A DNA stretch of 64,000 bases from Macrostomum lignano (Eukaryota): NCBI GenBank assembly GCA_002269645.1, contig NIVC01001138.1:120699-184698 (forward strand), given 5' to 3'. Below the pieces are notes generated by a model. That model searched no databases. It saw only the letters and a list, made by a program, of their open reading frames with translations, and was not told the origin of the DNA. Positions 1 to 62,290 of this stretch are shown piece after piece (the stretch's first letter is position 1; the number at the start of each line of letters is the position of its first letter). The position numbers and the translations under genes are program-made.

Positions 1-14839
<14,839 letters not shown>

Positions 14840-18833: not shown

Positions 18834-20141
<1,308 letters not shown>

Positions 20142-21057: not shown

Positions 21058-22618
21058 ATGCAGAAACTCCAATATCAACTCGATGCGCCTGCACCTCATG
21101 CCACAACGGCCCTAGCTGCGCGGGCCAATTCCTTGAAAAAATGGATTGTGTAAGTATTGTATCCGTAGACAACGAAAAAATATTTACAATTCTGACTCGC
21201 CCCCAGCCAGGAGTCGCCAGAATCAAAGGCCTGGACCAGTTGCGCGGCTCATTCACGGTGAGTAAGGACCTCGGCGTGTGCACCTCTGTGACAGATCTGA
21301 AGCGTCACTCTATACCAGTGTGTGATCTCCTGCTCCGCTTGGAGCTGCGCCTTGCTCAACTACAATCGGAAGCAGAGAGCCTGCCAGATTCTGCAGATGT
21401 TTCCCACACCGCCCGCGGACAGCAAGGACAAGGATAGCTCGGCCGTTTGCACAACTGGTGAAAAGTCGTTGGGAGGCGGGGACGGAGATGAAGTGTGGAT
21501 GGCCAGAGACTATTACGAGCGCTCAAACAGGAGCCGCAGGTGGTCATTTATATCGCCAAAGGAACATTTTACCGTGAGTAAGGGTGCATTAATGGTCGTC
21601 ATTGAGTATCCGAGCCATTTACATCTGCCTAATCAAACAACCCCTCCCCTCAGTTCCTTCCGGAGCTCCATCAGTGCAGCTGGCCAGCGTGCCCCAGACC
21701 GGCTGCTACCGCATCGAGGCCTTCGGAGGGACAGGCGGGGCAGTCATGACACTCACTGATGGCGTCTTCAACGGAGGTCGCGGCGCGACAGCGCTTGGCT
21801 ACTTCAACCTCACCCATGGCGACCTGCTGACCATCGTGATTGGACAAAAACCTGTCAATAGTAAAACTGCTACGCTCATAACTCTAGTCCACCGAAGTAT
21901 TTCTTACATCATCCCATTTTAAGATTGAATTGATGAAAAAACATTCTTCAAAATTGTCAGTGGCCACGGAATCTACGGACAGCGATAACGTGGGTAGCGG
22001 GGCCGCTGGCGGGGCGGCACCTTCGTGTACAGGAGCAACGACAGTCGCCTTCTGGTTGCCGCAGGCGGTGGCGGAGCAGCCGCGGTGTTTTTTGACGGTG
22101 CGTTGCCATGCCAGTGTGCGCAGCGCATTTCCAGCCGCAGTTCGCAGCGTCAGCGCCCCACAGCTGCCCCACCCCCTCCTTCCGTTCCAGGAGTCGACGG
22201 TCAGGCCGGCGAGAGCGGCGCAAACTCGACTGGCGCCGAGTCTGGCGCGGTCGGCTCCGGCGGCGCGAGCGGAGCTCCCGGAGCGTTCGTGAGCGGCGGC
22301 GGCCCGGGCGCGGGCTGGATGTTGAACGGCAGCATCTGCGACCGGTGCGGCAAAGGTCGAGACGGCAGCTGGGCGGGAGGCGAAGGCGAGATCTCCGGTA
22401 GGACGGGCGGCTTCGGAGGCGGTGGCGCTGCCTCTGCCGATGCTGGCGGCGGTGGCGGCGGCTTCAGCGGCGGAGGCGCGGGCTCGACTCAGCAGGCGGG
22501 CAGCGGCGGCGGCGGCTCCTTCTGCTCCGGCAGCGGTTGCAGCGCCACTACGGGCTGCAACACGGTTGACGCCGGCAGAGCCGTCGTGACGCCCGTCGGT
22601 CAGGAACTGTGCGTCTGA
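21058..22618 (+). CDS. PAN/apple-like + ALK/LTK-type glycine-rich domain protein, copy 1 (frameshifted as assembled; 5' exons uncertain)
   Basis: PAN-like Cys pattern VTLYQCVISCSAWSCALLNYNRKQRACQIL (~21303-21400). Glycine-rich domain motifs VPQTGCYRIEAFGGTGG, GGRGA...FNLTHGDLLTIVIGQ (exon to 21860), then from 21961 GGGGTFVY...LLVAAGGGGAA, GGGPGAGW, GGFGGGG, GGGGGGFSGG, GGGGSFC; stop at 22616-22618. A 1-nt shift is needed at GGGG 22011-22014. Confidence 0.75.
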
Positions 22619-23545
22619 TGAGGCTCAGAGTCTGTGTGATGTCAGTCAGTCAGGAGCTGTATGAGTCTGATGAGGCTCAGAGTCTGTGTGATGTCAGTCA
22701 GTCAGGAGCTGTGAGTCTGATGAGGCTCAGAGTCTGTGTGATGTCAGTCAGTCAGGAGCTGTATGAGTCTGATGAGGCTCAGAGTCTGTGTGATGTCAGT
22801 CAGTCAGGAGCTATATGAGTCTGATGAGGCTCAGAGTCTGTGTGATGTCAGTCAGTCAGGAGCTGTATGAGTCTGATGAGGCTCAGAGTCTGTGTGATGT
22901 CAGTCAGTCAGGAGCTGTGAGTCTAATGAGGCTCAAAGTCTGTGTGATGTCAGTCAGGAGCTATATGAGTCTGATGAGGCTCAAAGTCTGTGTGATGTCA
23001 GTCAGTCAGGAGCTGAGTCTAATGAGGCTCAAAGTCTGTGTGATGTCAGTCAGGAGCTATATGAGTCTGATGAGGCTCAGAGTCTGTGTGATGTCAGTCA
23101 GTCAGAAGCTGTGAGTCTAATGAGGCTCAAAGTCTGTGTGATGTCAGTCAGGAGCTATATGAGTCTGATGAGGCTCAAAGTCTGTGTGATGTCAGTCAGT
23201 CAGGAGCTGAGTCTAATGAGGCTCAAAGTCTGTGTGATGTCAGTCAGGAGCTATATGAGTCTGATGAGGCTCAGAGTCTGTGTGATGTCAGTCAGTCAGA
23301 AGCTGTGAGTCTAATGAGGCTCAAAGTCTGTGTGATGTCAGTCAGGAGCTATATGAGTCTGATGAGGCTCAAAGTCTGTGTGATGTCAGTCGCTGTGAGT
23401 CTGATGAGGCTCAGAGTCTACGTGATGCCAGCTCTGAATCTGTGTGATGTTATTAACTATATGAGTCCGTGTGTGATGTCAGCTCTGAGTCTGATGAGGC
23501 TCAGAGTCGATGTCAGTCTGCAACTTGAGCTGTGGTCTGGACTCT
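22595..23545. repeat. ~42-58 bp minisatellite beginning inside the last codons of the glycine-rich gene (GTCAGTCAGGAGCTGTATGAGTCTGATGAGGCTCAGAGTCTGTGTGAT)
   Basis: Tandem copies; the first unit overlaps the coding end gtc ggt cag gaa ctg tgc gtc TGA. Confidence 0.95.
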
Positions 23546-28200: not shown

Positions 28201-28312
28201 CATCATTCCTTTTGTTAAACGCTACCGGACAAATAAAAACGACATTATTCACCCGGTACTAGACGAATAATATCCACATTGTTCACTCGATACCGGATGA
28301 ATAGTCACTGTC
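25270..28312. mobile_element. Non-autonomous Mutator (MULE)-like DNA transposon, ~3.0 kb
   Basis: ~260-bp imperfect terminal inverted repeats (25270 to ~25535 versus ~28053-28312; G[G/A]CAGTGACTATTCATCCGGTATCG...). 9-bp TSD TAATAAATA at 25261-25269 and 28313-28321. No transposase ORF inside. Confidence 0.85.
25729..27010. mobile_element. Nested non-autonomous hAT-like element inside the MULE-like element
   Basis: TIRs TAGGGACTTCAGTGAG (25729-25744) and CTCACTGAAGTGCCTA (26995-27010). Flanking direct repeat TCTACAG(T) at 25722-25728/9 and 27011-27017/8, i.e. a 7-8 bp TSD. Confidence 0.75.
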
Positions 28313-31584: not shown

Positions 31585-32630
31585 TTTCGGATGATTAGGC
31601 TATTCTTAATTCTATGAAATAAAATGGAGCTAGGATGACACCTAAAGCACTTAAACTAGATTTGATGAGAATATTCTAATGACAAAAGACAAAGTCAATA
31701 TGATTAAGACAGCTAGCTGAAGCAAAATATACAAACAGTTTTCTTTTTACTCATTTACCACAGTTTGCATATTGGCTTTAAAGTATATTTCCATCAGTCT
31801 TCACTCCTCAGTCAACCAATTAAAATGAAGCAGCCCCCGGAATGAGGCCTCACCGCCTGGCCAATTGAACATTGCATATTGGACAAGCAAAATTGTACTG
31901 AAATTGTATCTTTCAGCAGCGGCAGATCCAGGGTTTTTGCTTAGGGGCTGAGAATTACATGTGAGGGTGCCGCCTTTTGTCAGGCAGGGGCGCCTGGCGC
32001 TGCATCAGGTTAGAACCTATGCGATGAACGCCATTTTTAGCGCTTGCAGCACCTTTTGGCGCCTGTGACCCTTTCTAGGACAATGGAGCAACCTCCTGTG
32101 ATAGGGCGCCCACCTAAGACAGGCGCTGTTCGATTTGGGTGGCGGGGGACAACTGGGCGGGTCAATAGACCATGTGAATGAAGTGAGCAGTCGCTCAAAC
32201 TCTTTTGTTCCTTCGTTATATGAGTGATTCGCTCATCGTATTGCAGATCATTGTTGGTAAAATAAATAAGACAAAGTCATATCTTCTTTAAGGAACCAAA
32301 ATTTTTTTTAGAAACTATAAAGCTAAGCCTTGGGGCTTGGGGAAACCTGGAGAGCCAGTAATTTATGACGGGGAGACATTTAGTTTCTTTTACTTCCTTA
32401 GTCGTTTATCCTTTCATTGACAGGAAGGAAGAAAAATTACATGTAAAATTTGTAACCTTCTTATGCCATGACTTCAATCTATCTGATTTCATCAAACCAT
32501 CCAGACTTCATAGATCCCATGTCGTCATATTTTATCTGTCATGTTTCTATTTCTTCTGATTTGAAATGCCTATTAGTGCTTATTATGCGCAATGATATTT
32601 TTTCCAATTTTTATATAGCTTTTATTCCAC

Positions 32631-35250
32631 GGCGCGTTGACTATGGCGGCGAAGAACTCGCGCATCTCGTTCCTGCGCTCATCCGGAGTGTCGCCTGCCA
32701 GGTTGAGCACGATGCGACGCTTTCGCCCCGTCAGAGTGTTGATGACGGACCAGGCCACGCGCTCTCTGGCATTGGGCCCTGCGGCAGAGACGGCTTGGAT
32801 GGCGTCATCGACAGCGGACTGCTGCCGCTGCAGGTAGACAGCCGCCAGAGCCTCCTCCGCCTCGCGAGTTTGCCGCCCACTCAGACGGAGCCTCTCCAGA
32901 TCTTCCCTCGCTTCGTCGATCGCGGGGTCGTCCTGCCAGACCGGCTGCCTTCGCTGGGCCGGTCGCATCAGCGGGACTGCTTGCTCCGCAGCGGCTCGAA
33001 CTGCAGCGCTCACCTCCGCGTACTCGGCTCCTCCACGCTTGTCGCCCAGCGCAGTGACAAAGGCACCGGCAAAGCGACATCGCGTCTCGGCGTCCCTGAG
33101 CGCGCGGTAGTAGCGCCGCGGTGGCCGCTTTGGCGGACGGTAGAGCGGGTCCCGAAGCCGAAGGTCGCAGATGAGCAGCCGATGGTCGGACCGCAGAGCC
33201 AGCGGCGTAATGGTGCGGCAGTTGGTGACGCGGCGGCTCACACGAAAGCGCACAAGCACGTGGTCGAGCTGTGCCAGCCTCCGCGTAGCGTTCCGGCCGC
33301 GCGCGTTCCGCCGCCTCCGCTTGCAGCCCACGAAGGTCGCGAGCCTGCCCGGTGACTTGCGGAATCTGGTGTTGGCCGACACCATGTCCTGTCTCTCCAG
33401 GAAGTCCTCTAGCGCTCCGGTGTTGCCGTTCTCGCGCGCTGTCACGAACAGCGATCGCTCGGACCTACGCAGAACTGCGTTCAGGTCTCCGAGAATGACC
33501 ACTGTGTCACGTTGCGCCATCTCCTCCACCCGCACCGAGAGTTGCTCGAAGAAGGCCTGAGCCTCATCGGAGCGGGTAGCAGGCGGCGCGTACGCGCAGA
33601 ACAGGCGGGCGTTCCGGCCGCGAAGCCGGACGTCGACCCGAAGCAGCCGAGAAGACAGGGAGACGCAGCGACAGCTCTGCTGCAGCCTCGGTCCGATCAG
33701 CGCTCCAACTCCTCCACGGCCTCGCTCATCCGCTGAGGTGTACCAGAGTGTCCACCCGGCGCCCAGGTCCTCACAGTGAAGTCCGGGGTCGGCTCTGATA
33801 GACACCTCCTGTAGTGCGATGACATCACAGCTGAGGTCGAGCGCTAGCCTTGCCAGCAGCCCTCTCCGCCATGTGGCCTTGAGAGTGCGGCAGTTCAGCG
33901 TCCCGACCCGAAGCGTGCCCTCTGGTACGGCTGGGGCTCGGTGCTGGTGAGCCTCATGGCCCCCGGCGCCACCCGGAAGATCCAATTGGGCCAGCGCAGC
34001 AGCAGCTCGGCGGGCGGCGCCTGAGCAGAACGGATTCCGGCCCCATCGCGGCACAGTGACGCAGATCCTGGCTCTTCGGCGAGTCATCGAGGAGGCGCGC
34101 ATCCGCCAGTTGACCCTGATCCTGATCTTCGTTGATTTCAGGAAGGCCTTCGACTCGGTCGTGAGGGACGCGCTCCCAGAGGTGCTCCGTGCGTACAACG
34201 TGCCAGAGCTGCTGATTTCTGCTGTCATGGCGCTGTACCACGGCACGACGGCTGCTGTCTCAACACCGGACGGCCTATCGGATTTCTTCGAGACATCCTC
34301 CGGGGTGCTCCAGGGAGATACGCTAGCGCCGTTCCTGTTTATTCCGGTGCTTGACTGGGTGCTACGGACTGCTCTGCCTTCCAACGACGACGGCTTCCTG
34401 CTGCGGCGACGCATGGGTCGACGCCAACCGGAGAGACGGCTCAGCGTGCTTGGCTACGCCGATGGCCTCGCCCTGCTGTCCTCGACCGTCGAGGGCGCCC
34501 AACGACAGCTGGATAGGCTGGTTGCCGTTGCTGCGAGCGTCGGCCTGGTGGTCAACACGCAGAAGACCGTCGTGCTATGCGTGCCGGGCGACACCGAGGC
34601 TGCAATCTTCTGCCGAGGCGCTGACGGACAGGCGAGTGAGCTTCCAAGATGTCAGCAGTTCGTCTACCTCGGCGGTCTGGTTCCCAACGTCCGCGAGGAT
34701 CTGCGGCGTCGCCGAGGACTTGCCTGGGCTGCCTTTCGTTCTATAAGGTCAGTCCTGCAGTCCGAGGCCCTACCGGACCGCCAGAGGGCGGCGCTGTTCC
34801 AGGCGGTGATCGAGACCGTCCTGTTATACAACACCGAGACCTGGACGCTGACAGACTCGCTCGAGGCTCAAGTCGACGCGGCGCACGCTGGCCTGCTGCG
34901 CGCCGCCTTCAAGATCGGCAACGAGCGAGTCACCAACACGGTGCTCTATCATCGCGTCGGCCTGGCCCGTCCTAGCGATCTGCTGCGCCGTCGGCGACTC
35001 CAGCTGGCAGGCCACGTCATCCGCGCCGAGGCCTACTGTCCGGAGCCGGTGCAGGTGCTGCTACTTACGTTGCAGGCACCCTACCGGCGGGGACAGGCGA
35101 GGACTCGGCGCTACGTCGACTGTCTGCTGGCTGACGCCGGCGCCCCGGACTCTGCCGGCGGTGCGGCCTTTGTTCGCGCCCAAGCCTTGAAGCGCGCCAT
35201 CTGACGCTGCTTTTGCGAACTGACAGCGTACAATGTTGTTGTTGTTGTTG
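32631..35250. mobile_element. RTE-type non-LTR retrotransposon with inverted 5' segment
   Basis: Minus strand 32631 to ~34018 encodes an AP endonuclease (LRVGTLNCRTL, DVIALQEV, ILGDLNA, QLDHVLV, SDHRLL). Plus strand ~34019-35204 encodes RT (EQNGFR, DFRKAFDSV, GVLQGDTLAP, YADG, YLG). (GTT)n tail to 35250. 9-bp TSD TTATTCCAC at 32622-32630 and 35251-35259. Clade assignment is by resemblance. Confidence 0.92.
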
Positions 35251-35639
35251 TTATTCCACTAATTTCTATGCTAAAATATTTTAGCTTTTAACCTATATCT
35301 ATTAATAAAAAAACAAATATAGCTAGAATGGCCAAGGCTTTGCAAGGTTATTGATAAAGTTAGCTCTATGCCTTAAAATGTGCATTAGTGACAAAAACAT
35401 TTTAGATTTTTTGCTATTTTTTCTATTCTCTTTAATTCTTTTTTTCCTATAGAAAAAATGGAGTATTTTAAGTTGTTTATTGTTTATTGACTATTTAAGA
35501 CAACAAAGCTAACTTATTCAAAAAATATAAAAATAAGAATTTTGTCAGAATTTCAATTATATCTAAATAAAGAAGATGAATAAAAAATAGAAAAAAAGTT
35601 TATTATATTGGCTTTGCATTTTATAATGACTTCTTATGT

Positions 35640-39800: not shown

Positions 39801-39993
39801 TAACAGGCTGGCTGCTCAAACTGAAGCTGCTCAAGCTGAGGAGAGGCGCTTGCGCGACAAGTACATGCAGCTGTACCTGACCGCCTTTGGCAGGCTGAGG
39901 GACGCTGAGAATCGGCCGCTGGATCCCAGGGTGCACCGGCTGCAACACGGCCTGGATGGATCCGTGATTCTGGTTGCTAGGGACGCTGCTTAG
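36814..39993 (+). CDS. cnc: CNC-bZIP transcription factor (cap'n'collar / NFE2L1 / NFE2L2-like), 2 coding exons
   Basis: Exon 36814-37992 (donor TGT|gtaagt) joins in phase 0 to exon 39334-39993 (acceptor tttttcag). Family motif HNHTY, CNC region (LTYNEVV...F..LL), basic region EVRKRGKNRLAASKCRQKK and leucine zipper; stop TAG 39991-39993. Confidence 0.9.
38025..38745. repeat. 33-bp intronic minisatellite (GGACCATATGGGGCTTTCAGAGTCCCTTTTTAT)
   Basis: About 21 tandem copies directly after the splice donor of the CNC intron. Confidence 0.97.
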
Positions 39994-40069
39994 ACTGGGA
40001 AAACGCTTCTATGAATATGCTTTTGCGAACTTGATTGACTGGTTGCTAAGGTGCGCTAAATGAACTCTT

Positions 40070-44340: not shown

Positions 44341-44354
44341 TGTCATTGCTTCAG

Positions 44355-49400: not shown

Positions 49401-49701
49401 GCAGCTCGCCAATCCGTATTTGCACGCCGACGAAGTGATAAGCTCTCGTTTCAGCTTAGTCAGGTGGGTGTCCGTGTCTTTGTTTTCAAGCCCGACATCG
49501 TTGAAGGCTCCCTCGAGTAGATCTCGCATGTACGCATTCAGTGGTCCGTACTCAGAAGGCCGTGACTGCAGCATCGGGCGAGGTAGCCAATCTTCGATAG
49601 AGCGGCCGACCACGGTGCAAAGTGCGTCTCCCTCTTCAGGTACTTGGTCATGTTGAGCGGAATGCTGTAGTCCAGATAGCCGGCACTGGCCAGAGCGAAA
49701 C

Positions 49702-50039
49702 TGCAATGACTCGAGAACGAAGTCTTGATTCGCTATGCACTGGAAATTGGCTCCCGAGTGGCAGACAGGAATAAGAGATGTAAACCAGACCGTATCGTCT
49801 AGCTTTGCCATATACGAGTATTCGTGGGCTCCTGGGCCCCAACATAGCCAGGCGCGCTGTGGCACGATGCATGGAACACGCGTACGAATGGTGCATACGT
49901 AGCATGGGGGAAGTGTTCAGAAGGGGTGACTCCGGTGAGTCAGTGAGGGGAACAAACAGAGTGCAAACAAACATAGTCAGTGGTAGCGGCAGACCATATG
50001 GCCAGGACTGCGGAGCGATCCCCAGCCCAGGCCATCACA
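49702..50039. mobile_element. Solo LTR (338 bp) inserted in the aminopeptidase coding sequence
   Basis: TG...CA termini (TGCAATGAC...CATCACA); 5-bp TSD GAAAC at 49697-49701 and 50040-50044. Removing it restores LLDDSFALASAGYLDYSIPL. Confidence 0.8.
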
Positions 50040-50860
50040 GAAACTGTCATCGAGCAGACGAGCCCTGTCCTGTGGACTGAACACCGTGTGATTCGAGACC
50101 AGCTGATCGATGAGCCGCTTCCAGTTGTCCAAGTCGTAGTTCACTCTGTAGAAGCCGGACGAGCGAAGGTTGAGCAGATACCAATCGGCCGAGCTGTCGA
50201 GTTCGAAGGACTGCTCCTTCTCGGTCATCCAGTTCACGAAGCCCGACACGTCCCATGGTGACAGGGATGATCCACGTGTAGTTGTAGTCGCTCAGGTAGC
50301 TCGGAACTTGACTGGCATTCCAGAGAAAGTGGTTCTGCGTCAGTGTGAGACGTCCAGTTGCAGTGACGGAACAGTTGAGCACGGGGTAGCCCATCTGCTT
50401 GATCCAGCGATCCATCACTAAGCCGACGTCGAGAGACTTGTTTGTGGACTCGGAGTACTGCCGGGTCAGACTGTCATAGAGAGCGGTGTGGAATGTGTTT
50501 CCGTAGCTGTTCTGACGCAGGTAGTTTCCGACACCTTTGCGGAAGACCTCGTCACCAACGAACCCGTGAAGCATGCGGAGAATCATTCCACCTTTAAAGT
50601 AAGTGATTGAGTCGAAGTTTTGGTAGATATTTATCAGTTGCTTGACTTCGAAGAAAATCGGATGACTGTTAGCCAGCGAATCTGTTTCCAGCGTCTTCAG
50701 CTTATAAGTCGCAACAAACTGAGCATCAAAATCCCAATCCGGTCGAATGTTGTTCACGCCAATGGTTAGCGCGAAACTAGCGAATCCTTCGTTCAGCCAC
50801 AGGTCGTCCCACCATTTAGGAGTGACTAAGTTTCCAAACCACATGTGAGCGACCTCGTGA

Positions 50861-51429
50861 CAAGGACCACTAGAAGTTACCGTTGTATCAGGACGCAACA
50901 CTCGTAAATATTGCAAAATTATTTGAAGGCCCGCTTGTTTACGTGTATCTATCGGTACTTGCCTTCAAAAAAGTATTCTACTTTACTGTTTTAAAGAAGC
51001 ATGCACTACATTTGAGCCTCAGAAACTCAACATTTGCAGCCTACTCAACTCTGTACAGATTATCTGCTTTATAAAGCTTCCAAACTGGAGGATATAAAGT
51101 ATGGTCTGCTACTTTATCGAGACTAGGAGGCAATGATTGAAGTAACTGAAACTTTATTCATTTTGTATGCAATGAAATATTGTGTATTGCCGTTACTTTA
51201 CTGTACGCCCGCCGCTCCTACATGTAGATATAGCGCCAAACTTTGCATCATGTTAAAGAAAACAAAATTTTGAGCAACCTGGCGAAAAAAATATCTTTTT
51301 AAGTGCAACCAGTCCGGAGTTATGAGCATTTAAAGTTCAGCTGCAATGCAAACAAGCGGGCCTTCAAATAATTTTGCAATATTTACGAGTGTTGCGTCCT
51401 GATACAACGGTAACTTCTAGTGGTCCTTG
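50861..51429. mobile_element. MITE (569 bp) of P/hAT type with perfect 80-bp TIRs
   Basis: TIR CAAGGACCACTAGAAGTTACC...GGCCCGCTTGTTT at 50861-50940 and reverse complement at 51350-51429; 8-bp TSD CCTCGTGA at 50853-50860 and 51430-51437. Confidence 0.93.
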
Positions 51430-53402
51430 CCTCGTGACTGACAAGAATTCCACTAAACTGGTAGTTGAAGGCCCTATATTTTCGGTTGTCAATGGCAACG
51501 TAACTTTCACGATAGACAACTAGACCCCAGTTTTCCATGCCCCTTGAAGGAAAATCAGGAACAGCAATTTGGTCTAATTTTTTTCAGCGGAAATCGAACA
51601 TCAAAGTAGGATTCGAAGAACAGAGTTAGATTCTTTAGCGCGTCCTGTGAAAAGTTCATTATGTTTAGAAGCTCTGGTCTCACATAAGTGCGGTACGTTC
51701 GCATCTGAGAATCCGTGTCTTCAATGTATTCGAACTGAGAAACAACGAACGCAAGAATGTACGTGGACATGATGGGAGTGGTCTCAAAGTCTTCCTTCTC
51801 TACCTGATCCGAGTCGCTCATCTCGCTGAACCAATTGCTGGCCCTGGCTTTGGTGACTCGTTTCGATGGCATGTTGCTGAGCGCAGTGAAACCCTTCTCT
51901 CTGACAATGCTGATGTCAAACCTGGCCTTGAATGCGGGCTCGTCGAAACACGGAAACACCATCCTGGCGTGATATACTTGAAGCTGGGACGTCGCTAGGT
52001 ACTTTGTGGTTCTCTTCTCGGTGTACGAGCTCAGGTACAAGCCTCGCAAACCGGATCGAAGCGGAGATCTGAAGCGTGGGATCTCGATCACGATGTTGGT
52101 GCTGTTCGCTGGCAGCGGCGCACACAGGTCGATGCTGTACCACTGACTATCCCTGTCGTACACACAGTTGGCGATTGCGTAGTTTATGTCTAAGCAGCTG
52201 TCGTAGACCCGAAAATCCGCTGCGGTGAGTTTAATGTTCTCCGCCGAGTGCAGCTTTATGTTGCTAGTTGAGTCTTCGATGCTGAGTCTCACCTGCATGG
52301 AGCCGATGAAGTAGAACTCCAAGGCATTGCTGCCGTAGATGTAGGGCGCCAGGGTGACTGCATAGTGTAGTGGCTTCACTCCGGTCGGCAGGCGGACGTT
52401 AGGCGGCGGTTGCCCCGCATTTTTTGCCTTGGTCTAATTGGTGCCGGATGTAGGTGCAGGAGTTGCTGGGGTCGGAGCAGTGTCAGGCTGGCCATAAACA
52501 GGTCCTTCTGCGAGCAATAGCAGCAGTGCTAGGGCCGTTAGCAAGCGTTGCTTTGGTGATTTCATTTCGAATGATTTTTTGTCTTCTTGTTTAGTCGCAG
52601 AATTGCTCTGTTGGTTCTAGCGAATTTATTCGTTCTTATTTTACTTGTACATAGGGATTTTGTAACGAACTGTATCATTTTATATCATTCTAGTCTGGAA
52701 GAAATCAAAAAAATCATACGAAATTATCTTGTTTTTTTAGAATATCCAGATCACTCCAGCTCCTAAATTGGTATTTATTGCATGCATTTGGATAAAACAT
52801 ATCAAAAATAATTAAATAAGGTTGAATAATTCTTAAGCTGAAAAATTTTGCTTAATAAAAAAAATAGCTATCATGAAAATTTCAACGTTTCCAATTTATG
52901 AGGTTGAAGCTTTAGCCTGCAGGAATGGATATCTGCGGTAAAAACTCACTGAAAAAAGCATTAGCTAGGCGCAGAACAAGGACAACTAAAGCAACGTATA
53001 TACAGGACGCAACACTCACGTTTCATGGGAAAGGTTCTGAAGCTTCATGGGCCACTTTTTGCCAAAAAAAAATGCACTAGCTATGGAGATAGAAAGTTTT
53101 GATTTTTTCAGCACAAAAATTGTTTTTGCTTTCGACAGATCCAATGTTCATCGTTTGATATGTTAATTGTGCCTTTCTTATAGCTCTATTGATATTCATA
53201 AAGCTTTTTGTTCAAAAAATTAACTAGGATTATGTGTTAATTTTTTATTCACCGTATATGTACATTTCCTGTATCTAAAAATCATAAAAATGCATGGCAA
53301 AGCTCGAGTCTTTGGTTTTGTGAATCTATTTTATCATCTCTGTTTCACATGTTGTTACAAGAATGGCAAAATAGATTCATAAAACCAATGAGCCGTGCCA
53401 TT

Positions 53403-55080: not shown

Positions 55081-55093
55081 GAGCCGTGCCATT

Positions 55094-55268
55094 TCAGTGG
55101 TTTTAAGGTAACCTTTTTACAACTGGGTGAACTGAAGCAATGCAGAGTTAAGTATCTTGCTCAAGGACACAAATTGTGGGTAGAGACCGAGTGGGTCGAG
55201 AATTGAATCCCCAACCTTTCAGTCGTGAGTCCGAAGCTCTAACCACACTATAGGCTGCGACCCCACTA
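55094..55268 (-). mobile_element. tRNA-derived SINE (head and conserved central domain), interrupted on its 3' side by the LINE
   Basis: Minus strand: A-box-like TAGTGTGGTTAGAGC, B-box-like GGGATTCAATTC, then TGTGTCCTTGAGCAAGATACTTAAC...CACCCAGTTGTAAAAAGGTTACC, which resembles the Meta-type SINE core (from memory, not searched). Confidence 0.7.
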
Positions 55269-56334
55269 GCTTCAAGGCCAAGCGCTCTCCTATTAATGAT
55301 GAAGTGGAAGCAGAACCGAAAACTGTCGACATTGATTATATAGTCACGCAAGAATTCAACGAGCGGCCCATCTAGAGATAATTAGCATTTAACAATACAT
55401 CGTATTTTTGGCTTCATGAAGTGAAAAAAGTAGCTAATGTTTTTTCAGACAGCTTTAATAACATAAGTTTGGAATCAATATACACTTGCAAAAATACGTA
55501 CATTTATGTATACGCAATCAATGTTTTTCCTGCCTACCCTGAGCTTTAGCGGCGGCTCTTCAAGTGAACACTTAAAAGGAAAAGAGCTGAAAAATGAGAA
55601 AAGGGAGGTTGCTGAAGTGTACCGAGCGGGAAGTGCTACCCTTCTTGGGAAACTAGGAAAAATTAGTCAAGAACCAGAGAGTTTTGCCCAATTGACGCCT
55701 AAACACCACCTGTCGGCACTCTGTGGCTGTTTTTACGTGTATACATCGGAGTTGTCTATTTTATCGCGTTGTGTCAAGCGCTTTAATTGTTTGTGCCGCC
55801 TTCTGAGTCAGGTTTACCCCACCTCTACAGAAGAGTAGGAATTAAAGACGCTTTCCATCTCCGTGTCAGCTTCTCGACTTCCTAGCCAAGTAGCTCCTAC
55901 TCTCGATCTTTCTCCAAAGCCACTCGACTCATCCCGTCACCCTTAGTTACTGGTCCAACAACTCAAGCTAAAGTTACTTCTGTAGAAAATATTTCTTTTG
56001 TTTTTATTCCCAAGTTAGTCCCAGCCGCTGTCAAAAATAGGAACAGGAAACATAAAGCAGGCGTGCATCTTCAGACAGCAAATGCAGCGCTTGAGAAAGG
56101 CTGGCTTATTGATTCGCTGAGAGGGTTGCGTCTTCATTGTGGTCCAAGCATTTTGACTATTTAGCTGACGCCTCTCACGGAAATATGGACGCCACTCTCT
56201 CAAGGAAGAGGAGAAACTTTTCAATTAGGTATAAAAAAGTAAATTTAACAGCAAGAGACGAAACAGATAAGATTACGAAAAATCTTAAAATTTTTATTCC
56301 ATTCCGAACTACTCGTAGAACTTTTTTAGCTGAA

Positions 56335-58040
56335 ATGATTTCGCAACTAATAATACTTTGTTTGCTATCCACCGGTAAGCTGCCTAATCCATTTCGCAAC
56401 TCACTTTGACCCAAATATCCCTGAACTCCCAATTAATTGCTTATTTCAGCCACCTGCGTGACTGCCAGCCAAGCTCCTGAGCAAGAGTACTACCTGGTCG
56501 ATGAGCCCGTTACCATCAACGCCTCGGTGAGCAGCGAAGTGATCAATGTGACCGGGGTGGCTTCCGAGATCGACTGCGTGACGAGGTGCCTGTCGAGAGG
56601 CTGCTCAGTGGCGGTGGCTCACGAGAGCATCGGGCTCTGCCAAATGGCCATGGTGTACGAAGGCCACTCGTCCGGGAGTCGCGTGCAGAGGCTGCTGGGC
56701 TCGGAGGCCGGAGCCAGGGTCTGGACGTTCGACGCACCGCTAATTCACCTAAACTTCAGCATTGAGTTTCTCAGTAAGGACTTCTGCAAAATTCCAAAGT
56801 TTCGTTAGATCTGCGAATATTTATCTCTCTATGCTAAACTCCATCTTCCAGACTCCAGCACCGGTAGAAACGGCACCATCCAGCAGCTGCTGATCGACAC
56901 CACCCACTGCTACCGGATTGAAGCTGCCGGTGCCAGCGGGAGTCCCGGGGCTCGACAACCGAGCGGTCGAGGAGCTGTCATGGCAGGCAACTTCAGCCTG
57001 ACTGCCGGCACCCTGCTGACCATTGTTGTCGGACAGCAGGGGGGCCCCGCTAGCGGTGATGGCGGCGGAGGTGGCGGCGGAGGCAGCTTTGTGTACACTG
57101 TCAACGCCTCTGGCAACCCGCTGCTGCTGCTAGCTGCTGGCGGAGGCGGCGGTGGCTGCTACTATGACGCTGGTAAGTGCCAGAGCAGGGTCTCGTCTGA
57201 CTGCTGAATCACCTGTTTGAGATGAGAGCCTTCATGCGAACGCGAGCATTGGTTATCAAAGAAGAATGAAGCGGATTAAAAAAAATTAAAGAGATAATTA
57301 ACAATTATTTTCTTGATTAGGACTCATTATTTGACATCATCAGGGTTGAATTATTTAACGAACGAGTGACTGAGCAAATTTAAAGTATGTACAGCTAGAG
57401 GAGAATGAGCAAAAGCAATGACTATGGCCCTAACCTTTGATTGATGGATTGGTTGATTGATTGATTGACTTATTGATTGATTGGTTATTTACAAGCTTAC
57501 TACTTACTATTAGTAGTCAGTTATCAAAGTTAAAGCTCCTGTCGTGTTTCAAAATTCAGGTGCTGATGGCTCAGGAGACGAAAGAGGCACGAACTCAGTT
57601 GCTGGGGATTCTGATTACTCTGGCTACGGCGGCAGCAACGGTCAGGCGGGCTTCAGCAATTCTGATAATAATGACGAAGACTACTACCCCGGCGGCTGCG
57701 GCGCCGGCTGGTTTGGCAAGAATACCAACGCTAAAGCCACGCAGCACGACGGCGACCACGGTGGAAGCTTGGCTGACGGCTGGGTCGGCGGAGCCGTTAA
57801 CACCAACTATAACGGCGGAACCGGAGGGTTCGGAGGCGGCGGCGGTGGCGGCAGCACCCCACGAACGACAATGGCGGCGGCGGAGGCGGCGGCTTCAGCG
57901 GTGGCGGCGCCGCTGGCAATCACGGTGGCGGAGGCGGCGGCTCCTTCTGCGGCGGCCGCGGCTGCGCCGCCATCAGCGGCGGCAACACCGGCAGCGACCA
58001 GGGCTTCGTCAAGGTGCAGTCGGTCCTGGATTGCGATTGA
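56335..58040 (+). CDS. Secreted PAN/apple-like + ALK/LTK-type glycine-rich domain protein, copy 2 (one frameshift as assembled)
   Basis: Exons 56335-56374 (MISQLIILCLLST), 56450-56773 (A-TCVTASQA...SEIDCVTRCLSRGCSVAV...GLCQM), 56852-57172 (GRNGTIQQ..IDTTHCYRIEAAGASG...GRGA...FSLTAGTLLTIVVGQQG...GGGGGSFV...LLLAAGGGGG) and 57560-58040 (GGCGAGW, GGFGGGGGG, GGGGGGFSGG, GGGGSFC; TGA 58038-58040). All introns phase 1; shift at ~57860. Confidence 0.85.
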
Positions 58041-59820
58041 ACAGTTTTGATGATAAAACAACTTTGGGTTGAGAATTCGAACGTTTTTGTCAATGTTATT
58101 TACCAGCCTAAGTAAGATTTCTAGTTAGTTAGAGGCAGGCGGTTGTGTGTAGCCTGGCGCACTTTAGGCGCGACATTGGCACACAACCGGCGAGAGCCAT
58201 TACTGGCGCCCATTCCGCCGAATCCCCTGAGCAGGCACACAAGCCGCGGATACGTACGCAGTCATACGCACAGGCACACACTCACACAGGAGTTTACAGC
58301 GGCCCTGACTTTATTTATCGTTAGGCATGTACACTTCACTGTGCCTTGGGGGTTGGGCCTCAAAGACGTTAATTTCAGGAGCAGAGCCAAGCCGAGATTC
58401 CAATTCAGCCCCAAATTAATGTGACTGCACTTGGTATCGAGCCTGGGCTGCTGGCACATCAGAGCGCCACGTTGGACCGCTGGGCTTCAGCCCCTACCCG
58501 TGACCTGACACAACAATTCTATATAGCACATGCATACGGTTATTATTACTACTAGTACATTTTCTTCTTCGTAAACATCATGTACTTTCTGCTAGAAATT
58601 GCCTTCATAGTTGCTCCTGTTCTTTTTGCTTTTTTTGCTGTATTTTTCTTTCACAAAGTAAAAAAGGTTTTTCAATCTGTGATATTTAATTTGGGCCCTT
58701 TGGGCCAGTAAGCAACTTCTCTCGGACCTCCCCATGAGGGTGTAATTCGAATTTGTAATTTTGCTGTTACACCCTATCGCTCAGCGTGGTGATTACGTAA
58801 TATACGCCCCGCAGTGTAAAGTGGAAGTTGTGCAACATGCAATTAGGGAGATTCAAGAGAAGTTGTTTACTTGTGCAAGTTTTAAATGTTGCCATTTCTC
58901 TAAGCTCTGCATCATTAACAACCCGATTTGTTCGATTTCGATCGCAGCTTGTGCACTATGCAGTTCTTTATAACAAATAAACATTGCACAAAAGAATTTT
59001 AACACCTGATTCTTATTGTTATTTGAAAATCGTTGTACACGCCGCAGAGGTGTTCCATTTTAATTATTTAAGCTAAAGTTAAATGTTTGCGGTTAACAAT
59101 CTTCTCTGTCAAGTAATGTCGCCCATGGGCCATACTACCGAACATCGGTTAAGGAAGCAACTTCTTCGGTTCTAGGAAAGTCTGTTTCTCAAAAAACCTG
59201 TGCTTAATGTGCTTAAAAAGCAGTACAGAAGTGTTTTGAGTGAGTATTGTCAGCTCAACTAAAAGGGTCTGAAAGTCAGCAGAAAATTGAAAGGGGAGGA
59301 GAGAAGCCTCCTACCCTGCTGACGCTGAGCACCTGTCCTCCTGCCCCTCTCGTCCATTTAGTTGCCAAGTGCCTTTGTTGCCAAGGCGATCTTCTAAGTT
59401 ATTAACCCGGCCCCGCCAAAAGAGGAGGAAGATGCTTCTAACTTCTCAACACCCAACAAGAGTTTCTACTCCTGATCATTGTTCTTTGCTCAGCAAGACT
59501 CGCCTGCCGCCTTACTGGTCTTTGCTTTTGTTTTAAGAGGCTCCCAAATTCACTGGCAAAAACTGAGACAAAAGCTGAAAGCTGCCAGGGAAGCCTGACA
59601 GGATTGAGAGGCTGGCGTATTGACCGAAGGGTAAAAATAGCGATGAAGAGGTTGTTTACCTGCCTTCCTTGTGGTATACTTAGGCTATTTAGCAAAATTC
59701 TCGCACCACAGAAATTGTGAGGCTCTCCTAATAAGCAGGGGTTCAAGTCTTTTTTCAAGGCGATACAAATCAAGACTAACCCTGATTTTATAATATTCAA
59801 TCCTAGTTTTCTTTACTGAA

Positions 59821-62290
59821 ATGATTTCGCAAATAGTACTACTTAGCCTGCTCTCCACCGGTAAGATACCTAATCCATTCCGCAACTCACTTTGACCCAA
59901 ATATCCCTGAACTCCCAATTAATTTGCTGATTTCAGCCACCTGCGTGACTGCCAGCCAAGCTCCTGAGCAAGAGTACTACCTGGTCGATGAGCCCGTTAC
60001 CATCAACGCCTCGGTGAGCAGCGAAGTGATCAATGTGACCGGGGTGGCTTCCGAGATCGACTGCGTGACGAGGTGCCTATCGAGAGGCTGCTCTGTGTGG
60101 TGGCTCACGAGAGCATCGGGCTCTGCCAAATGGCCATGGTGTACGAAGGCCACTCGTCCGGGAGTCGCGTGCAGAGGCTGCTGGGCTCGGAGGCCGGAGC
60201 CAGGGTCTGGACGTTCGACAAGATAAGCTCGGGACCTCGGGACAACAGGACTTTTATAAGTGAGCATTTATTTCTACTCTTTCACTTCGGCTTGTCTGGA
60301 AAGTCGAGAAAATGTGTGAAGCAAGCAAGAAAGAAGCAAGCTGTTGACATGGTGGACAAAGCTCAAGATCCTGACTTTATCGCCAGCCAAAGTAATAAAA
60401 GATCGTTGGCACAGTTCCCTAACAGCAGAAGTCGTAAATTTCAGACACCGGAACCGGCCGGACCGGCTCCATCCAGCAGCTGCTGATCAACTCCACCGGG
60501 TGCTACCGAATTGAAGCTGCCGGTGCCAGCGGCGGCTCCAGCACAGCCAAATCAGGCGGTCGCGGAGCCGCCATCGCTGGCACCTTCAGCCTGACAGCCG
60601 GTATCCTGCTGACCATTGCTGTCGGACAGCAGGGCGGTGCTGGTGGATCGCTCAGCTGGGGGGGCTACACAGGAGCTGGCGGAGGCGGAGGCAGCTTCGT
60701 GTACACATTTAACACGACTGGTTTGCCAACACTGCTTCTGGCCGCCGGCGGTGGTGGAGGCGCCTGTTACACTACTAATGGTAATGCTTTTAATGCCTGT
60801 TAATCCAATACACTAAAAATGTTCTGTCGGTATGTGTGTGATCGGGCCTGCCAATGATCAAGGTGGAATGCTGAGGCACATGTAACAAAGCTTCTAGTCT
60901 AAGAATTCTTGCTAAAAGGGGCTACTTTTCCTGCTGAATCTCTGACATGAATAACAATAGAGACTATCAAACATAGTTGAATGTTTTTTTAGATTTTTTC
61001 TTTAGCTGCCTAAAACACATTGCAGTACGAGACCCCTTGCTACCCCGGCCCTGTCCCCCAGCGACTATGAGAGTGAAATGTAGTATTGTTAGTGGTAAAT
61101 GTTTCATTCGAATTTAAAGAAGTTGGAAAAACATCGCAATGGGCCCGTCAACTTAAGCCCATAAAGTGGAGCCCGAGTAACATATGTACACAAATGATAC
61201 GCCATTATTCTCACAATGGCACTAGAAGGAAGCTGGGTGGTTGCACTAAAAAGCGACGAAAATTGGACTACGTGGGTAGAATAAAAAATTAACATAGAAT
61301 CCGATTTTTCTGAACTAGAAGCTTTATGAATATCAATAGAGCAATAAGAAAGGCGCAAATTATCAAAAGACGAACACTGGATCTGCCTCCTATCAAAAGC
61401 AATAACAATTTTTGTGCTGAAAAAATGAAAACTTCCTATCTCCGCTGTGTATTTTTTTCGGAGGAAACCTGCCTTCAAACATTTTCCAAAAACGAGGTTT
61501 CCTGTCCTTCCACTTAAGCCGTCCTTGATCCGTAACCGTAGCCGCCACTAGCTAGGCAGGATCTCCGTAGTCGCAATCCGTAACCGAATTTTGCTCAAAA
61601 AAATGCTGCGCCAAATTTTCCTGTAACTGCATAGTCGTACATGTAATTACGGTAGAACACTATAGCTAGGACAGATACCACAACTAATAAGTGTTCCTTA
61701 ATCGGTGTCTAGCAGCTCATTTCTGAAAAAATCAAGTTTTAGGGTCTTTCTGCTTCGGTTGTCCATCAATGACTCTAATATCTCGTAAAATATACCCCTC
61801 CATGGTTAATATTTCAGGCGCCGCCGGTTCCGGAGGAACATCCGGTACGGCTTCGATACCCGGTGACACTCCATACTACGGCTACGGAGGAGCGAACGGT
61901 CAGCCCGGATCCAACAACCCCGCTGGAAGGAAAACAGACTCTTACGTCGGTGGCTGCGGCGCCGGGTGGCTGGGAAAGGCAGCAAACCCACCAAGTAACA
62001 TGTACGATGGAGGTCGAGGCGGCAGTCTGGCTGATGGCTGGATTTGTGACAGCGCTGGACTGCTGGCGGCTTCGGTGGCGGAGGCGGAGGAGCTAATTAC
62101 CCGATGACGAGTCTCAACGCCGGTGGCGGTGGCGGCGGCTACAGGCGGCGGTGCCGGCGTCGCTGGCAATCACGGCGGCGGAGGCGGCGGCTCCTTCTGT
62201 GGCGGCAGCGGCTGCGCCGCCAGCAGCGGCGGCAACACCGGCAGCGACCAGGGCTTCGTCAAGGTGTGGCCGATTGATCAATGCAATTAG
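59821..62290 (+). CDS. Secreted PAN/apple-like + ALK/LTK-type glycine-rich domain protein, copy 3 (three frameshifts as assembled; may be a pseudogene)
   Basis: Exons 59821-59860, 59937-60259, 60445-60780 and 61818-62290 with the same phases as copy 2. Same motifs (GCYRIEAAGASGG, GGRGA, LLTIAVGQQGG, GGGGGSFVY, GGCGAGW, GGGGSFC); TAG 62288-62290. Shifts at ~60097, ~62060 and ~62143. Confidence 0.8.

What the first reader, a model, noticed from the sequence alone, without database searches (positions are those of the whole stretch)
21058..62290. Candidate undescribed system: kinase-less PAN/apple + ALK/LTK glycine-rich domain gene family (three members)
Seen: three genes (21058-22618, 56335-58040, 59821-62290) share a PAN-like Cys module followed by CYRIEA.G..G / GRGA / F.LT.G.LLTI.VGQ / GGGGSFV / LLAAGGGG / GGxGAGW / GGFGGGG / GGGGGFSGG / GGGGSFC. 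They stop right after, with no TM or kinase; copies 2 and 3 have signal peptides. Established: this motif series matches the ligand-binding glycine-rich region of ALK/LTK, a TNF-like beta module fused to a polyglycine-II helix bundle; PAN/apple domains bind proteins or glycans. Inference: secreted binding proteins (decoy receptor, lectin-like, mucus/adhesive or immune effector) that reuse the ALK scaffold. Standalone ALK-type glycine-rich proteins exist in other invertebrates, so novelty rests on the PAN fusion and its function.
Basis: partly seen in the sequence, partly recalled or inferred. Interest (0 to 1): 0.8.

Follow-up and report, generated by a model that had tools for sequence, protein, structure and literature searches.

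The report
Flatworm secreted PAN plus ALK-type glycine-rich proteins
Three intron-containing flatworm (Macrostomum) genes encode small secreted proteins that join a divergent PAN/apple module to the ligand-binding domain type of the ALK receptor without any kinase; the family is real and unstudied, but dozens of copies are already listed in public databases.

Summary
Three + strand genes (about 21064-22618, 56335-58040, 59821-62290) encode a four-cysteine module followed by the full ALK/LTK glycine-rich motif series. All three stop directly after it.

- **Glycine-rich domain:** Pfam PF12810 passes its threshold for genes 2 and 3. A family profile hits ALK, LTK and SCD-2 in the PDB (E 1e-18 to 1e-11). 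A confident AlphaFold model of a 41%-identical homologue matches only ALK/LTK structures.
- **N-terminal module:** it misses the Pfam PAN models. Its model matches only PAN/apple/WSC folds, its profile reaches a canonical PAN protein, and two paralogues pass the PAN_1 threshold.
- **No receptor features:** the window holds no kinase motif, and the proteins have no transmembrane segment.

- Every copy carries frameshifts (1, 1 and 3). So does the neighbouring aminopeptidase gene, in homopolymers, so assembly error is likely.
- Gene 1 has no identifiable start or signal peptide.
- At least 45 Macrostomum lignano UniRef entries are auto-named "Apple domain-containing protein" or "receptor protein-tyrosine kinase". 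Those examined share this architecture, and corals have kinase-less relatives.

The family is therefore catalogued but uncharacterised. The proposed function, soluble binding or recognition, is inference.

The parts
56335..56374 (+). Gene 2 exon 1: ATG plus the hydrophobic signal-peptide-like segment MISQLIILCLLST, ending in phase 1 at a GTAAG donor
   Evidence: highest Kyte-Doolittle window of the protein is at residue 1
56450..56773 (+). Gene 2 exon 2: divergent PAN/apple module with the cysteine pattern C-x3-C-x4-C-x11-C
   Evidence: AlphaFold model with core pLDDT 80-91; Foldseek top ~40 hits are all PAN/apple/WSC folds; no Pfam PAN hit
56852..57172 (+). Gene 2 exon 3: first half of the TNF-like/glycine-rich (TG) domain, from NSSTGRNG...CYRIEA to LLLAAGGGGG
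57560..58040 (+). Gene 2 exon 4: second half of the TG domain and the stop codon. One frameshift at the C4 run 57857-57860, which needs +1 nt
59821..59860 (+). Gene 3 exon 1: signal-peptide-like exon MISQIVLLSLLST
59937..60259 (+). Gene 3 exon 2: PAN-like module, identical in protein to gene 2 up to VWTFD (residue at the frameshift undetermined). It has a 1-nt deletion at about 60098 (GTGGCGGTGG in gene 2, GTGTGGTGG here)
60445..60780 (+). Gene 3 exon 3: first half of the TG domain
61818..62290 (+). Gene 3 exon 4: second half of the TG domain and the stop codon. Two frameshifts: -1 nt at about 62045-62062 and +1 nt at about 62143-62145
21064..21149 (+). Gene 1, first recognisable exon (...TPISTRCACTSCHNGPSCAGQFLEKMDC). 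The 5' boundary is a putative phase-1 acceptor. The upstream signal-peptide exon was not found
   Evidence: the GQFLE motif is shared with M. lignano P0002
21207..21573 (+). Gene 1 PAN-like module in two exons (21207-21257 and 21319-21573), with the cysteine pattern C-x3-C-x4-C-x10-C
21680..22618 (+). Gene 1 TG domain in two exons (21680-21860 and 21961-22618) plus the stop codon. It has a frameshift at the G4 run 22011-22014 and a 30-aa Pro/Ser-rich insertion. It is the most divergent copy
   Evidence: (PF12810 21.5 bits, below the cutoff of 24.5)
56322..56733 (+). Homogenised tract shared with 59809-60219 (95.6% nt identity). It covers 13 nt of 5' leader, exon 1, intron 1 and most of exon 2. 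The rest of the two genes is only 72-84% identical
   Evidence: dS 0.067 here against 0.86 in the TG domain

Best explanation
The three loci are paralogues of a multigene family found here only in Macrostomum flatworms.

Shown:
- Each gene encodes a roughly 390-aa protein with no transmembrane segment, no EGF module and no kinase.
- The parts in order are: a signal peptide (genes 2 and 3), a divergent disulfide-bonded PAN/apple module of about 90 aa, a short N-glycosylated linker, and a complete TNF-like plus polyglycine (TG) supradomain homologous to the ligand-binding region of ALK/LTK.
- Genes 2 and 3 are a tandem pair 1.8 kb apart. Their 5' halves were recently homogenised by gene conversion. 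Their TG domains have diverged under purifying selection.

Inferred mechanism:
- The proteins are secreted and act as soluble two-module binding proteins, not as receptors.
- The PAN module supplies a glycan- or protein-binding anchor.
- The invariant glycine motifs of the TG domain build a rigid polyglycine lattice on a TNF-like sandwich.
- The variable segments between the motifs form the specificity-determining surface, as in ALK (cytokine binding) and in the TG-type phage tail fibre Pam3 gp24 (host-receptor binding).
- The most likely biological role is extracellular recognition or adhesion, for example innate recognition of microbes or binding of matrix or mucus components.

The frameshifts are most likely assembly indels.
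For: Homology of the TG domain:
- PF12810 passes its threshold for genes 2 and 3.
- The family profile hits human ALK at 1.5e-18, LTK at 1.5e-17 and C. elegans SCD-2 at 1.4e-11.
- The AlphaFold model of homologue P0001 (41% identity) has pLDDT above 90 across the domain. Its 21 best PDB matches are all ALK/LTK TG or GRD structures, E 2e-11 to 2e-6.

PAN module:
- The model of the window exon 56452-56772 has a beta-beta-beta-alpha-beta-beta-beta-beta topology.
- It matches only the HGF N domain, plasminogen PAp, fungal oxidase PAN, Wsc1, SML-2, MIC4 and AMA1.
- Its profile reaches a canonical PAN protein, P0259, at E 3e-5 across 1.84 billion representatives.
- Paralogues P0249 and P0243 pass the PAN_1 gathering score.

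Secretion:
- Genes 2 and 3 have a hydrophobic N-terminus, 5-7 N-x-S/T sequons and 12 Cys, and no other transmembrane-like stretch.
- The intact M. lignano member P0276 has the same layout and ends at the same point.

No kinase motif occurs in the window.

Constraint: dN/dS is about 0.3 over the TG domain between genes 2 and 3. Differences cluster between the Gly motifs.

Precedent for a conserved Gly stem with variable binding tips: PMC9608196.

Assembly error: the adjacent M1 aminopeptidase has at least 3 frameshifts, two of them verified in A7 and A5 homopolymers.
Against: - No expression, localisation or binding data exist, so the functional part is inference.
- The window copies get no Pfam PAN hit even at E<=10. 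The Foldseek E-values for the module are only 7e-3 to 0.3, with TM about 0.5.
- The TG fold was modelled on a 41%-identical homologue, not on a window protein.
- Polyglycine-II geometry was not measured directly.
- Gene 3 has three frameshifts, one of them outside a homopolymer. Gene 1 lacks a start and signal peptide and scores below the Pfam cutoff. Some copies may therefore be dead.
Confidence: 0.55

Rival explanations
1. Some or all of the three copies are pseudogenes. They would be decaying duplicates of a large family with no current function.
For: - Frameshifts occur in every copy: gene 1 has one, gene 2 one and gene 3 three.
- The lesion at about 60098 in gene 3 is not in a homopolymer.
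- Gene 1 has no recognisable start or signal exon, a 30-aa insertion and a sub-threshold PF12810 score.
- Large lineage-specific families usually contain dead copies.
Against: - The conserved M1 aminopeptidase gene in the same window has at least 3 frameshifts. Two were verified in A-runs. This gives an indel rate of roughly one per kb, which explains the GRD-gene lesions.
- No premature stop occurs apart from those created by the shifts.
- dN/dS is about 0.3 across the TG domain of genes 2 and 3.
- M. lignano database models of this family show the same out-of-frame stretches (P0011, P0015, P0242, P0255). This points to a systematic assembly problem in GC-rich glycine runs.
Confidence: 0.2
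2. The proteins are soluble decoys or ligand traps. They would bind the flatworm's own ALK ligand (Jeb-, HEN-1- or ALKAL-like) and modulate ALK signalling.
For: They carry the complete ligand-binding TG supradomain of ALK/LTK without signalling parts.
Against: - Identity to ALK is only 18-26%.
- The family has dozens of divergent paralogues, which is unusual for a decoy of one ligand.
- The nearest non-flatworm relatives are kinase-less coral proteins and bacterial surface proteins, not ALK.
- In invertebrate ALKs, ligand binding also involves other ectodomain regions (general knowledge, not tested here).
Confidence: 0.08
3. The proteins are structural or adhesive secretions, such as mucus, rhabdite, eggshell, adhesive-gland or seminal-fluid components. 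They would not be specific recognition molecules.
For: They have a secretory layout, 23% Gly, many Cys and glycosylation sites. The family is lineage-specific and expanded. PAN/WSC-type modules are frequent in extracellular matrix and adhesive proteins (general knowledge).
Against: - The glycine content is organised into a compact folded domain (pLDDT above 90), not an extended fibrous repeat.
- The proteins are small and have two modules.
- No literature link was found.
Confidence: 0.15
4. The three loci are 5' exons of larger ALK-like receptor tyrosine kinase genes.
For: UniProt auto-names several homologues 'receptor protein-tyrosine kinase', and one (P0012) 'Protein kinase domain-containing'.
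Against: - An in-frame stop follows the conserved C-terminal Cys in all three copies and in homologues P0001, P0003 and P0276.
- No kinase motif occurs in any frame of the 64 kb.
- Pfam finds no kinase in P0012.
- Gene 3 starts 1.8 kb after gene 2 ends.
Confidence: 0.02

Closest known systems
Macrostomum lignano 'Apple domain-containing protein' / 'receptor protein-tyrosine kinase' entries (e.g. A0A1I8HRN4, A0A1I8GEH1, A0A267FZB5 = PAA78312.1)
   Same: They have the same architecture: signal peptide, four-Cys PAN-like module, NSSxGRxGSIQ linker and a full glycine-rich domain, with a stop right after. They are 40-50% identical (46% or less for members aligned full-length) and share the same motifs and Cys positions.
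   Different: The window copies are distinct paralogues, or orthologues in a close relative. No hit exceeded 51% identity. Those entries are automatic predictions with no experimental characterisation.
ALK / LTK receptor tyrosine kinase ectodomain TG (TNF-like + glycine-rich) supradomain (PDB 7NX0, 7NX1, 7N00, 7LRZ; C. elegans SCD-2 7LIR)
   Same: The domain is homologous. It has the same order of Gly motifs, the same predicted fold and an extracellular location.
   Different: The window proteins have no EGF-like module, transmembrane helix or kinase, and no MAM or LDLa region. A PAN module sits upstream instead. Identity is 18-26%. The ligand is unknown.
Kinase-less GRD-only proteins of cnidarians (Pocillopora damicornis RMX57863.1 and related contigs)
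   Same: They are small proteins of about 300 aa consisting of the TG domain alone. They are 37-46% identical to gene 2 over that domain.
   Different: They lack the PAN-like module, and the one locus examined is a single exon.
Bacterial PF12810 'glycine-rich' proteins with PEP-CTERM or T9SS sorting domains
   Same: They share the Pfam domain and are exported or surface proteins.
   Different: They are prokaryotic, have different partner domains and are uncharacterised.
Phage tail-fibre receptor-binding TG module (cyanophage Pam3 gp24; compare S16 gp38 polyglycine sandwich)
   Same: A TNF-like sandwich carries a glycine-motif lattice whose variable distal tips bind the target. Its authors report structural similarity to C. 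elegans ALK (PMC9608196). It is a weak Foldseek hit, 7yfw, E 0.16.
   Different: It is a trimeric fibre with an N-terminal helical shaft, and no sequence homology was demonstrated here. It is a working analogy only.
PAN/apple domains (HGF N domain, plasminogen PAp, apicomplexan MIC4/SML-2 lectins; WSC)
   Same: The predicted fold and the core Cys pattern C-x3-C...C...C on a helix-hairpin agree. A core of four to six cysteines is described in PMC9249922.
   Different: The hairpin between the middle cysteines is shorter (x4). The window copies fall below all Pfam PAN models.

Membership tests
ALK/LTK glycine-rich domain family (Pfam PF12810, TG supradomain) | Match to the PF12810 HMM at or above the gathering score (24.5 bits) | tested here: met
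   Gene 2 scores 26.5 bits and gene 3 scores 33.8 bits. Gene 1 scores 21.5 bits, just below the cutoff (on frameshift-corrected conceptual translations).
ALK/LTK glycine-rich domain family (Pfam PF12810, TG supradomain) | Sequence homology to solved ALK/LTK TG domains | tested here: met
   The profile of the three window proteins plus homologues hits ALK at 1.5e-18, LTK at 1.5e-17 and SCD-2 at 1.4e-11, aligned across profile positions 95-367.
ALK/LTK glycine-rich domain family (Pfam PF12810, TG supradomain) | TNF-like beta-sandwich interrupted by a polyglycine-II lattice | tested here: inconclusive
   The model of the 41%-identical homologue P0001 has pLDDT above 90. It has beta strands at both ends and a 145-residue stretch without regular helix or strand between them. 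It matches only ALK/LTK TG structures. The window proteins themselves could not be modelled. Phi/psi angles of the glycine stretches were not available.
ALK/LTK receptor tyrosine kinases | Transmembrane helix and cytoplasmic tyrosine-kinase domain downstream of the GRD | tested here: not met
   A stop codon follows directly after the GRD in all three genes. No HRDLAARN, DFG or GxGxxG-VAVK motifs occur in six frames of the window. No transmembrane-like window was found.
ALK/LTK receptor tyrosine kinases | Membrane-proximal EGF-like module after the GRD; MAM and LDLa modules upstream (ALK) | tested here: not met
   Only 8-20 residues follow the last Gly motif. The only Pfam hit at E<=0.01 is PF12810.
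PAN/apple domain superfamily (PF00024, PF08276, PF08277, PF14295) | Match to a Pfam PAN HMM at the gathering score | tested here: not met
   The window modules get no PAN hit even at E<=10. Paralogues do pass: P0249 PAN_1 22.6 bits and P0243 23.5 bits against a cutoff of 21.4.
PAN/apple domain superfamily (PF00024, PF08276, PF08277, PF14295) | PAN fold: beta-sheet packed on one helix carrying the C-x3-C pair, with four core cysteines | tested here: met
   The AlphaFold model of window 56452-56772 has core pLDDT 80-91 and the order E-E-E-H-E-E-E-E, with the helix at the C-x3-C. The top ~40 Foldseek PDB hits are all PAN/apple/WSC, with E 7e-3 to 0.3, probability 0.57-1.0 (at least 0.9 for the first 35) and TM about 0.45-0.5. 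This rests on a predicted structure only.
PAN/apple domain superfamily (PF00024, PF08276, PF08277, PF14295) | Profile-level link to canonical PAN proteins | tested here: met
   The module profile hits the Bulinus truncatus protein P0259 at E 3e-5 across 1.84 billion representatives. The matched stretch, residues 94-154, overlaps a PAN_3 hit. The whole protein scores 82 bits for PAN_1.
Macrostomum PAN-like + GRD secreted family (UniProt unreviewed entries) | Same domain order, linker motif NSSxGRxGSIQ, conserved Cys positions, and termination right after the GRD | tested here: met
   Shown by the alignment with P0001-P0010 and the intact member P0276. All named hits of the module profile except P0259 are M. 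lignano.

The most novel reading that the evidence does not exclude
The Macrostomum PAN+TG family is a diversified repertoire of secreted recognition molecules. A polyglycine-lattice scaffold would display variable loops, the same design principle as phage tail-fibre adhesins and the ALK cytokine-binding site. The repertoire would be used for innate immune or self/non-self recognition and would diversify by tandem duplication with modular gene conversion. That would make it a previously unrecognised class of invertebrate pattern-recognition proteins, and a clue to what the ALK ectodomain did before it was wired to a kinase.
Probability: 0.15. Interest if true: 0.7.

Novelty: new member of a known kind. 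Interest (0 to 1): 0.38.

Why it matters
The ALK/LTK glycine-rich domain is known functionally only as the cytokine-binding part of a receptor kinase. Its wider distribution (bacteria, Trichomonas, corals, phage fibres) is unexplained.

A flatworm lineage keeps dozens of kinase-less secreted copies fused to a PAN module. Macrostomum lignano offers RNAi, transgenesis and in situ hybridisation, so this is a tractable place to ask what the scaffold binds when it is not a receptor.

For genome annotation there are two practical lessons. These proteins are auto-named 'receptor protein-tyrosine kinase' although they have no kinase. Their GC-rich glycine runs are also hot spots for frameshift errors in the assembly.

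Tried and rejected
- **Pfam PAN models** on whole proteins and on seven isolated N-terminal modules at E<=10. The only hit was one sub-threshold PAN_1 match (P0009, E 0.11).
- **Word-indexed homologue search with the N-terminal module alignment.** It returned one hit and was uninformative. The exhaustive HMMER search was used instead.
- **Structure prediction with the spliced, frameshift-corrected window proteins.** I therefore modelled a database homologue for the TG domain and the uninterrupted window exon for the PAN module.
- **Exact-sequence look-up of the intact 644-aa transposase-like ORF** to identify the source contig. It is not on record.
- **Search for a signal-peptide exon of gene 1** in 19800-21060. 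None was found.
- **Four of the six literature searches** (Macrostomum with ALK, glycine-rich, PAN or apple; PF12810). No paper describes this family.
- **Chance Gly-rich low complexity.** Rejected. tblastn hits at 5201-5974 are CT-repeat artefacts, whereas the three loci have ordered motifs and significant profile and fold matches.
- **Bacterial contamination.** Rejected. The genes have GT-AG introns and metazoan neighbours: ABCG, BIR, bZIP_Maf, M1 aminopeptidase and LINE.

Full report
**Nature of the window**

The 64-kb window is eukaryotic. Its genes have GT-AG introns and it holds 31 minisatellite arrays. Pfam identifies metazoan genes:
- an ABCG-type transporter on the minus strand,
- a BIR-domain gene,
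- LINE endonuclease and reverse-transcriptase fragments,
- a bZIP_Maf gene,
- a DUF4218 transposase-like ORF,
- an M1 aminopeptidase on the minus strand.

A 289-aa aminopeptidase exon finds Macrostomum lignano as its best named hit at 76% identity. The next animals reach 41-46%. All named close homologues of the finding are also M. lignano. The window therefore comes from a macrostomid flatworm, either M. lignano itself (a paralogous or homeologous copy) or a close relative.

**Checking the observation**

Three-frame translation and splice-site inspection confirm three + strand genes.
- Genes 2 and 3 share a four-exon structure with introns in phase 1: a signal-peptide exon, a PAN-like exon and two exons for the glycine-rich domain.
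- Gene 1 has a different intron pattern and is much more divergent (39% identity to gene 2).
The motifs align column for column with database homologues.
- tblastn finds only these three copies. Two additional hits at 5.2-6.0 kb are CT-repeat artefacts.
- Each gene ends with a stop codon a few residues after a conserved C-terminal cysteine. The M. lignano homologues P0001, P0003 and P0276 terminate at the same place.
- No kinase signature occurs in any of the six frames of the window.
- The only strongly hydrophobic segment apart from a conserved beta strand is the N-terminus of gene 2. Gene 3's N-terminal exon is only moderately hydrophobic.

None of the three reading frames is clean.
- Gene 2 needs one extra base at a C4 run (57857-60).
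- Gene 1 needs one at a G4 run (22011-14).
- Gene 3 needs three corrections, at about 60098, about 62045-62 and about 62143-45.
- The ATG at 21058 proposed for gene 1 is out of frame with the conserved exon that encodes ...GQFLEKMDC, a motif shared with P0002.
- That exon most plausibly begins at a phase-1 acceptor at 21064, as in genes 2 and 3. No signal-peptide exon was found in the 1.2 kb upstream.

**Are the frameshifts real?**

The neighbouring M1 aminopeptidase is otherwise highly conserved, with an intact HExxH, yet it shows at least three frame changes inside conserved motifs. Two were examined:
- [13 protein letters not shown] at an A7 run,
- SCKK/MPKFREYV at an A5 run.

The third, at about 50200, was not inspected at the DNA level. 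This amounts to about one indel per kb of coding sequence across the window, which is typical of an unpolished long-read assembly.

Several M. lignano database models of this family also contain translated out-of-frame stretches (P0011, P0015, P0242, P0255).

Between genes 2 and 3 the glycine-rich domain has dS 0.86 and dN 0.26, a ratio of about 0.3, so both evolved under constraint. I therefore regard assembly error as the most likely cause. I cannot exclude that gene 3 (three lesions, one of them not in a homopolymer) or gene 1 (no start, a 30-aa insertion, sub-threshold Pfam score) is a pseudogene.

**The C-terminal domain**

- Pfam PF12810 (ALK_LTK_GRD) is the only hit at E<=0.01 (gene 3 also has a sub-threshold Gly_rich_2 match, E 0.055). 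It scores 26.5 bits for gene 2 and 33.8 for gene 3, both above the cutoff of 24.5, and 21.5 bits for gene 1.
- A profile of the family hits the PDB sequences of human ALK (1.5e-18), LTK (1.5e-17) and C. elegans SCD-2 (1.4e-11) over essentially the whole domain.
I modelled the best homologue, P0001 (41% identity), with a 35-sequence alignment.
- In that model residues 150-410 mostly have pLDDT above 90. Beta strands lie at both ends, with a long confidently placed stretch of almost no regular helix or strand between them. This is what a TNF-like sandwich carrying a polyglycine lattice looks like to DSSP.
- Foldseek against the PDB returns 21 significant hits. All are ALK or LTK TG/GRD structures, including the invertebrate one, with E 2e-11 to 2e-6.
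- The next hit, which is not significant, is the cyanophage Pam3 tail fibre. Its authors describe a TNF-like plus glycine-rich receptor-binding module similar to C. elegans ALK (PMC9608196).

**The N-terminal module**

- Pfam PAN models do not detect it in the window copies, even at E<=10.
- The cysteine pattern C-x3-C-x4-C-x10/11-C fits the PAN core. I recall the HGF N domain as C-x3-C-x9-C-x11-C.
- The uninterrupted window exon 56452-56772, modelled with family members, gives a core pLDDT of 80-91 and a beta-beta-beta-alpha-beta-beta-beta-beta topology.
- Its top ~40 PDB matches are exclusively PAN/apple-type folds: the HGF N domain, plasminogen PAp, a fungal copper oxidase PAN domain, Wsc1, SML-2, MIC4 and AMA1. 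E-values are modest, 7e-3 to 0.3, with TM about 0.5.
- An exhaustive HMMER search with the module profile against 1.84 billion representatives finds 25 proteins. Every named one is M. lignano except a snail protein with three canonical PAN_1 domains, matched at E 3e-5 at a PAN_3-positive stretch.
- Two paralogues, P0249 and P0243, pass the PAN_1 gathering score, and P0249 also passes PF12810.

I conclude that the module is a divergent PAN/apple domain. The claim rests on predicted structure and transitive profile evidence.

**Family context**

- The same architecture occurs in many M. lignano entries. UniProt auto-names them 'Apple domain-containing protein', 'WSC domain-containing protein' or, misleadingly, 'receptor protein-tyrosine kinase'. 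I counted at least 45 UniRef100 entries.
- PAA78312.1 (405 aa) is an intact example: signal peptide, PAN-like module, GRD, stop.
- The PAN-like module also occurs beside fibrinogen-C domains in two very long, possibly fused, M. lignano models.
- The nearest relatives outside flatworms are kinase-less GRD-only proteins about 300 aa long. One is from the coral Pocillopora damicornis and others come from animal contigs in metagenomes.
- Next come bacterial PF12810 proteins with PEP-CTERM or T9SS sorting signals.
- The scaffold is therefore not an ALK invention, and the PAN fusion is not undescribed in databases. My searches found no paper that characterises it.

**Evolution within the window**

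Genes 2 and 3 lie 1.8 kb apart.
- From 13 nt upstream of the ATG through exon 1, intron 1 and most of exon 2 they are 95.6% identical (56322-56733 against 59809-60219).
- The rest of the two genes is 72-84% identical.
- dS is 0.067 in the 5' part against 0.86 in the rest.

This mosaic indicates a recent gene-conversion event confined to the signal-peptide and PAN part. Differences in the GRD concentrate in the segments between the invariant glycine motifs.

**Mechanism**

Shown:
- the domain composition,
- a secretory-type layout, with a signal-like N-terminus, 5-7 N-glycosylation sequons and 12 cysteines,
- the absence of receptor parts,
- purifying selection.

Inferred: the proteins are secreted, soluble, two-module binding proteins.
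- PAN domains in other proteins bind glycans or proteins.
- The TG supradomain binds a cytokine in ALK/LTK and a host receptor in the Pam3 fibre, where conserved glycine motifs form the stem and variable tips give specificity.
- The pattern of conserved motifs and variable inter-motif segments in the flatworm paralogues fits that design.

I consider extracellular recognition or adhesion the most likely role. I rank lower a decoy for the ALK ligand, a purely structural or adhesive secretion, and pseudogenes. The idea that these are exons of a receptor kinase is effectively excluded.

**Verdict**

This is a real, correctly recognised domain architecture. The three genes are further members of a lineage-specific family that is catalogued but functionally unstudied. 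It is of moderate interest for the evolution of the ALK ectodomain. It is not a new kind of system.

Noticed in passing
window 48809-52500 (- strand): An M1 (aminopeptidase N-like) gene has an intact HExxH but at least three frameshifts inside conserved motifs. Two are in homopolymers: an A7 run at about 51575 and an A5 run at about 49398. This suggests a window-wide indel error rate of about one per kb of coding sequence.
   Followed up: partly
window 56322-56733 vs 59809-60219: A sharp mosaic separates two parts of genes 2 and 3. The leader, exon 1, intron 1 and the PAN exon are 95.6% identical, and the rest is 72-84% identical. This is a recent gene-conversion tract that ends just after the codons for VWTFD. 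Upstream promoter regions show no BLAST similarity.
   Followed up: partly
window 1668-14896 (- strand): ABCG-type transporter exons (ABC_tran, ABC2_membrane_7) are spread over more than 13 kb. The introns are filled with long minisatellite arrays of 20-, 24-, 54- and 90-bp units, up to 2.2 kb each.
   Followed up: no
window 16904-17725 (+): An intact 273-aa ORF carries a single BIR (inhibitor of apoptosis) domain. A 743-aa BIR protein (P0253) also appeared as a hit of the PAN-like module profile (E 2.9e-10), which probably reflects a fused gene model.
   Followed up: no
window 32573-35204: LINE-type endonuclease (- strand ORF, 613 aa) and reverse transcriptase (+ strand ORF, 382 aa) lie on opposite strands and overlap by about 360 bp. 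They are either head-to-head element fragments or a long antisense ORF in GC-rich sequence.
   Followed up: no
window 36814-39993 (+): A bZIP_Maf / CNC-like transcription factor gene (basic-zipper exon 39349-39993) is interrupted by a 33-bp minisatellite at 38033-38740.
   Followed up: no
window 42406-44340 (+): An intact 644-aa single-exon ORF has a weak DUF4218 (transposase-associated) match. The exact sequence is not on record in the assembly collection.
   Followed up: partly
window 22595-23431: A 48/98/194-bp tandem array starts at the stop codon of gene 1 and runs for about 0.8 kb, so the gene's 3' UTR is a minisatellite.
   Followed up: no
database proteins P0251, P0256 (M. lignano): The same divergent PAN-like module occurs next to fibrinogen C-terminal domains in very long M. 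lignano gene models. If these models are not fusions, the module is shared with fibrinogen-related lectin-type proteins.
   Followed up: partly
database proteins P0244, P0249, P0250, P0252, P0254 and cluster members: UniProt automatically names many kinase-less GRD proteins of M. lignano and of the coral Pocillopora 'receptor protein-tyrosine kinase'. This naming appears to be an annotation error carried over from the ALK domain rule.
   Followed up: partly
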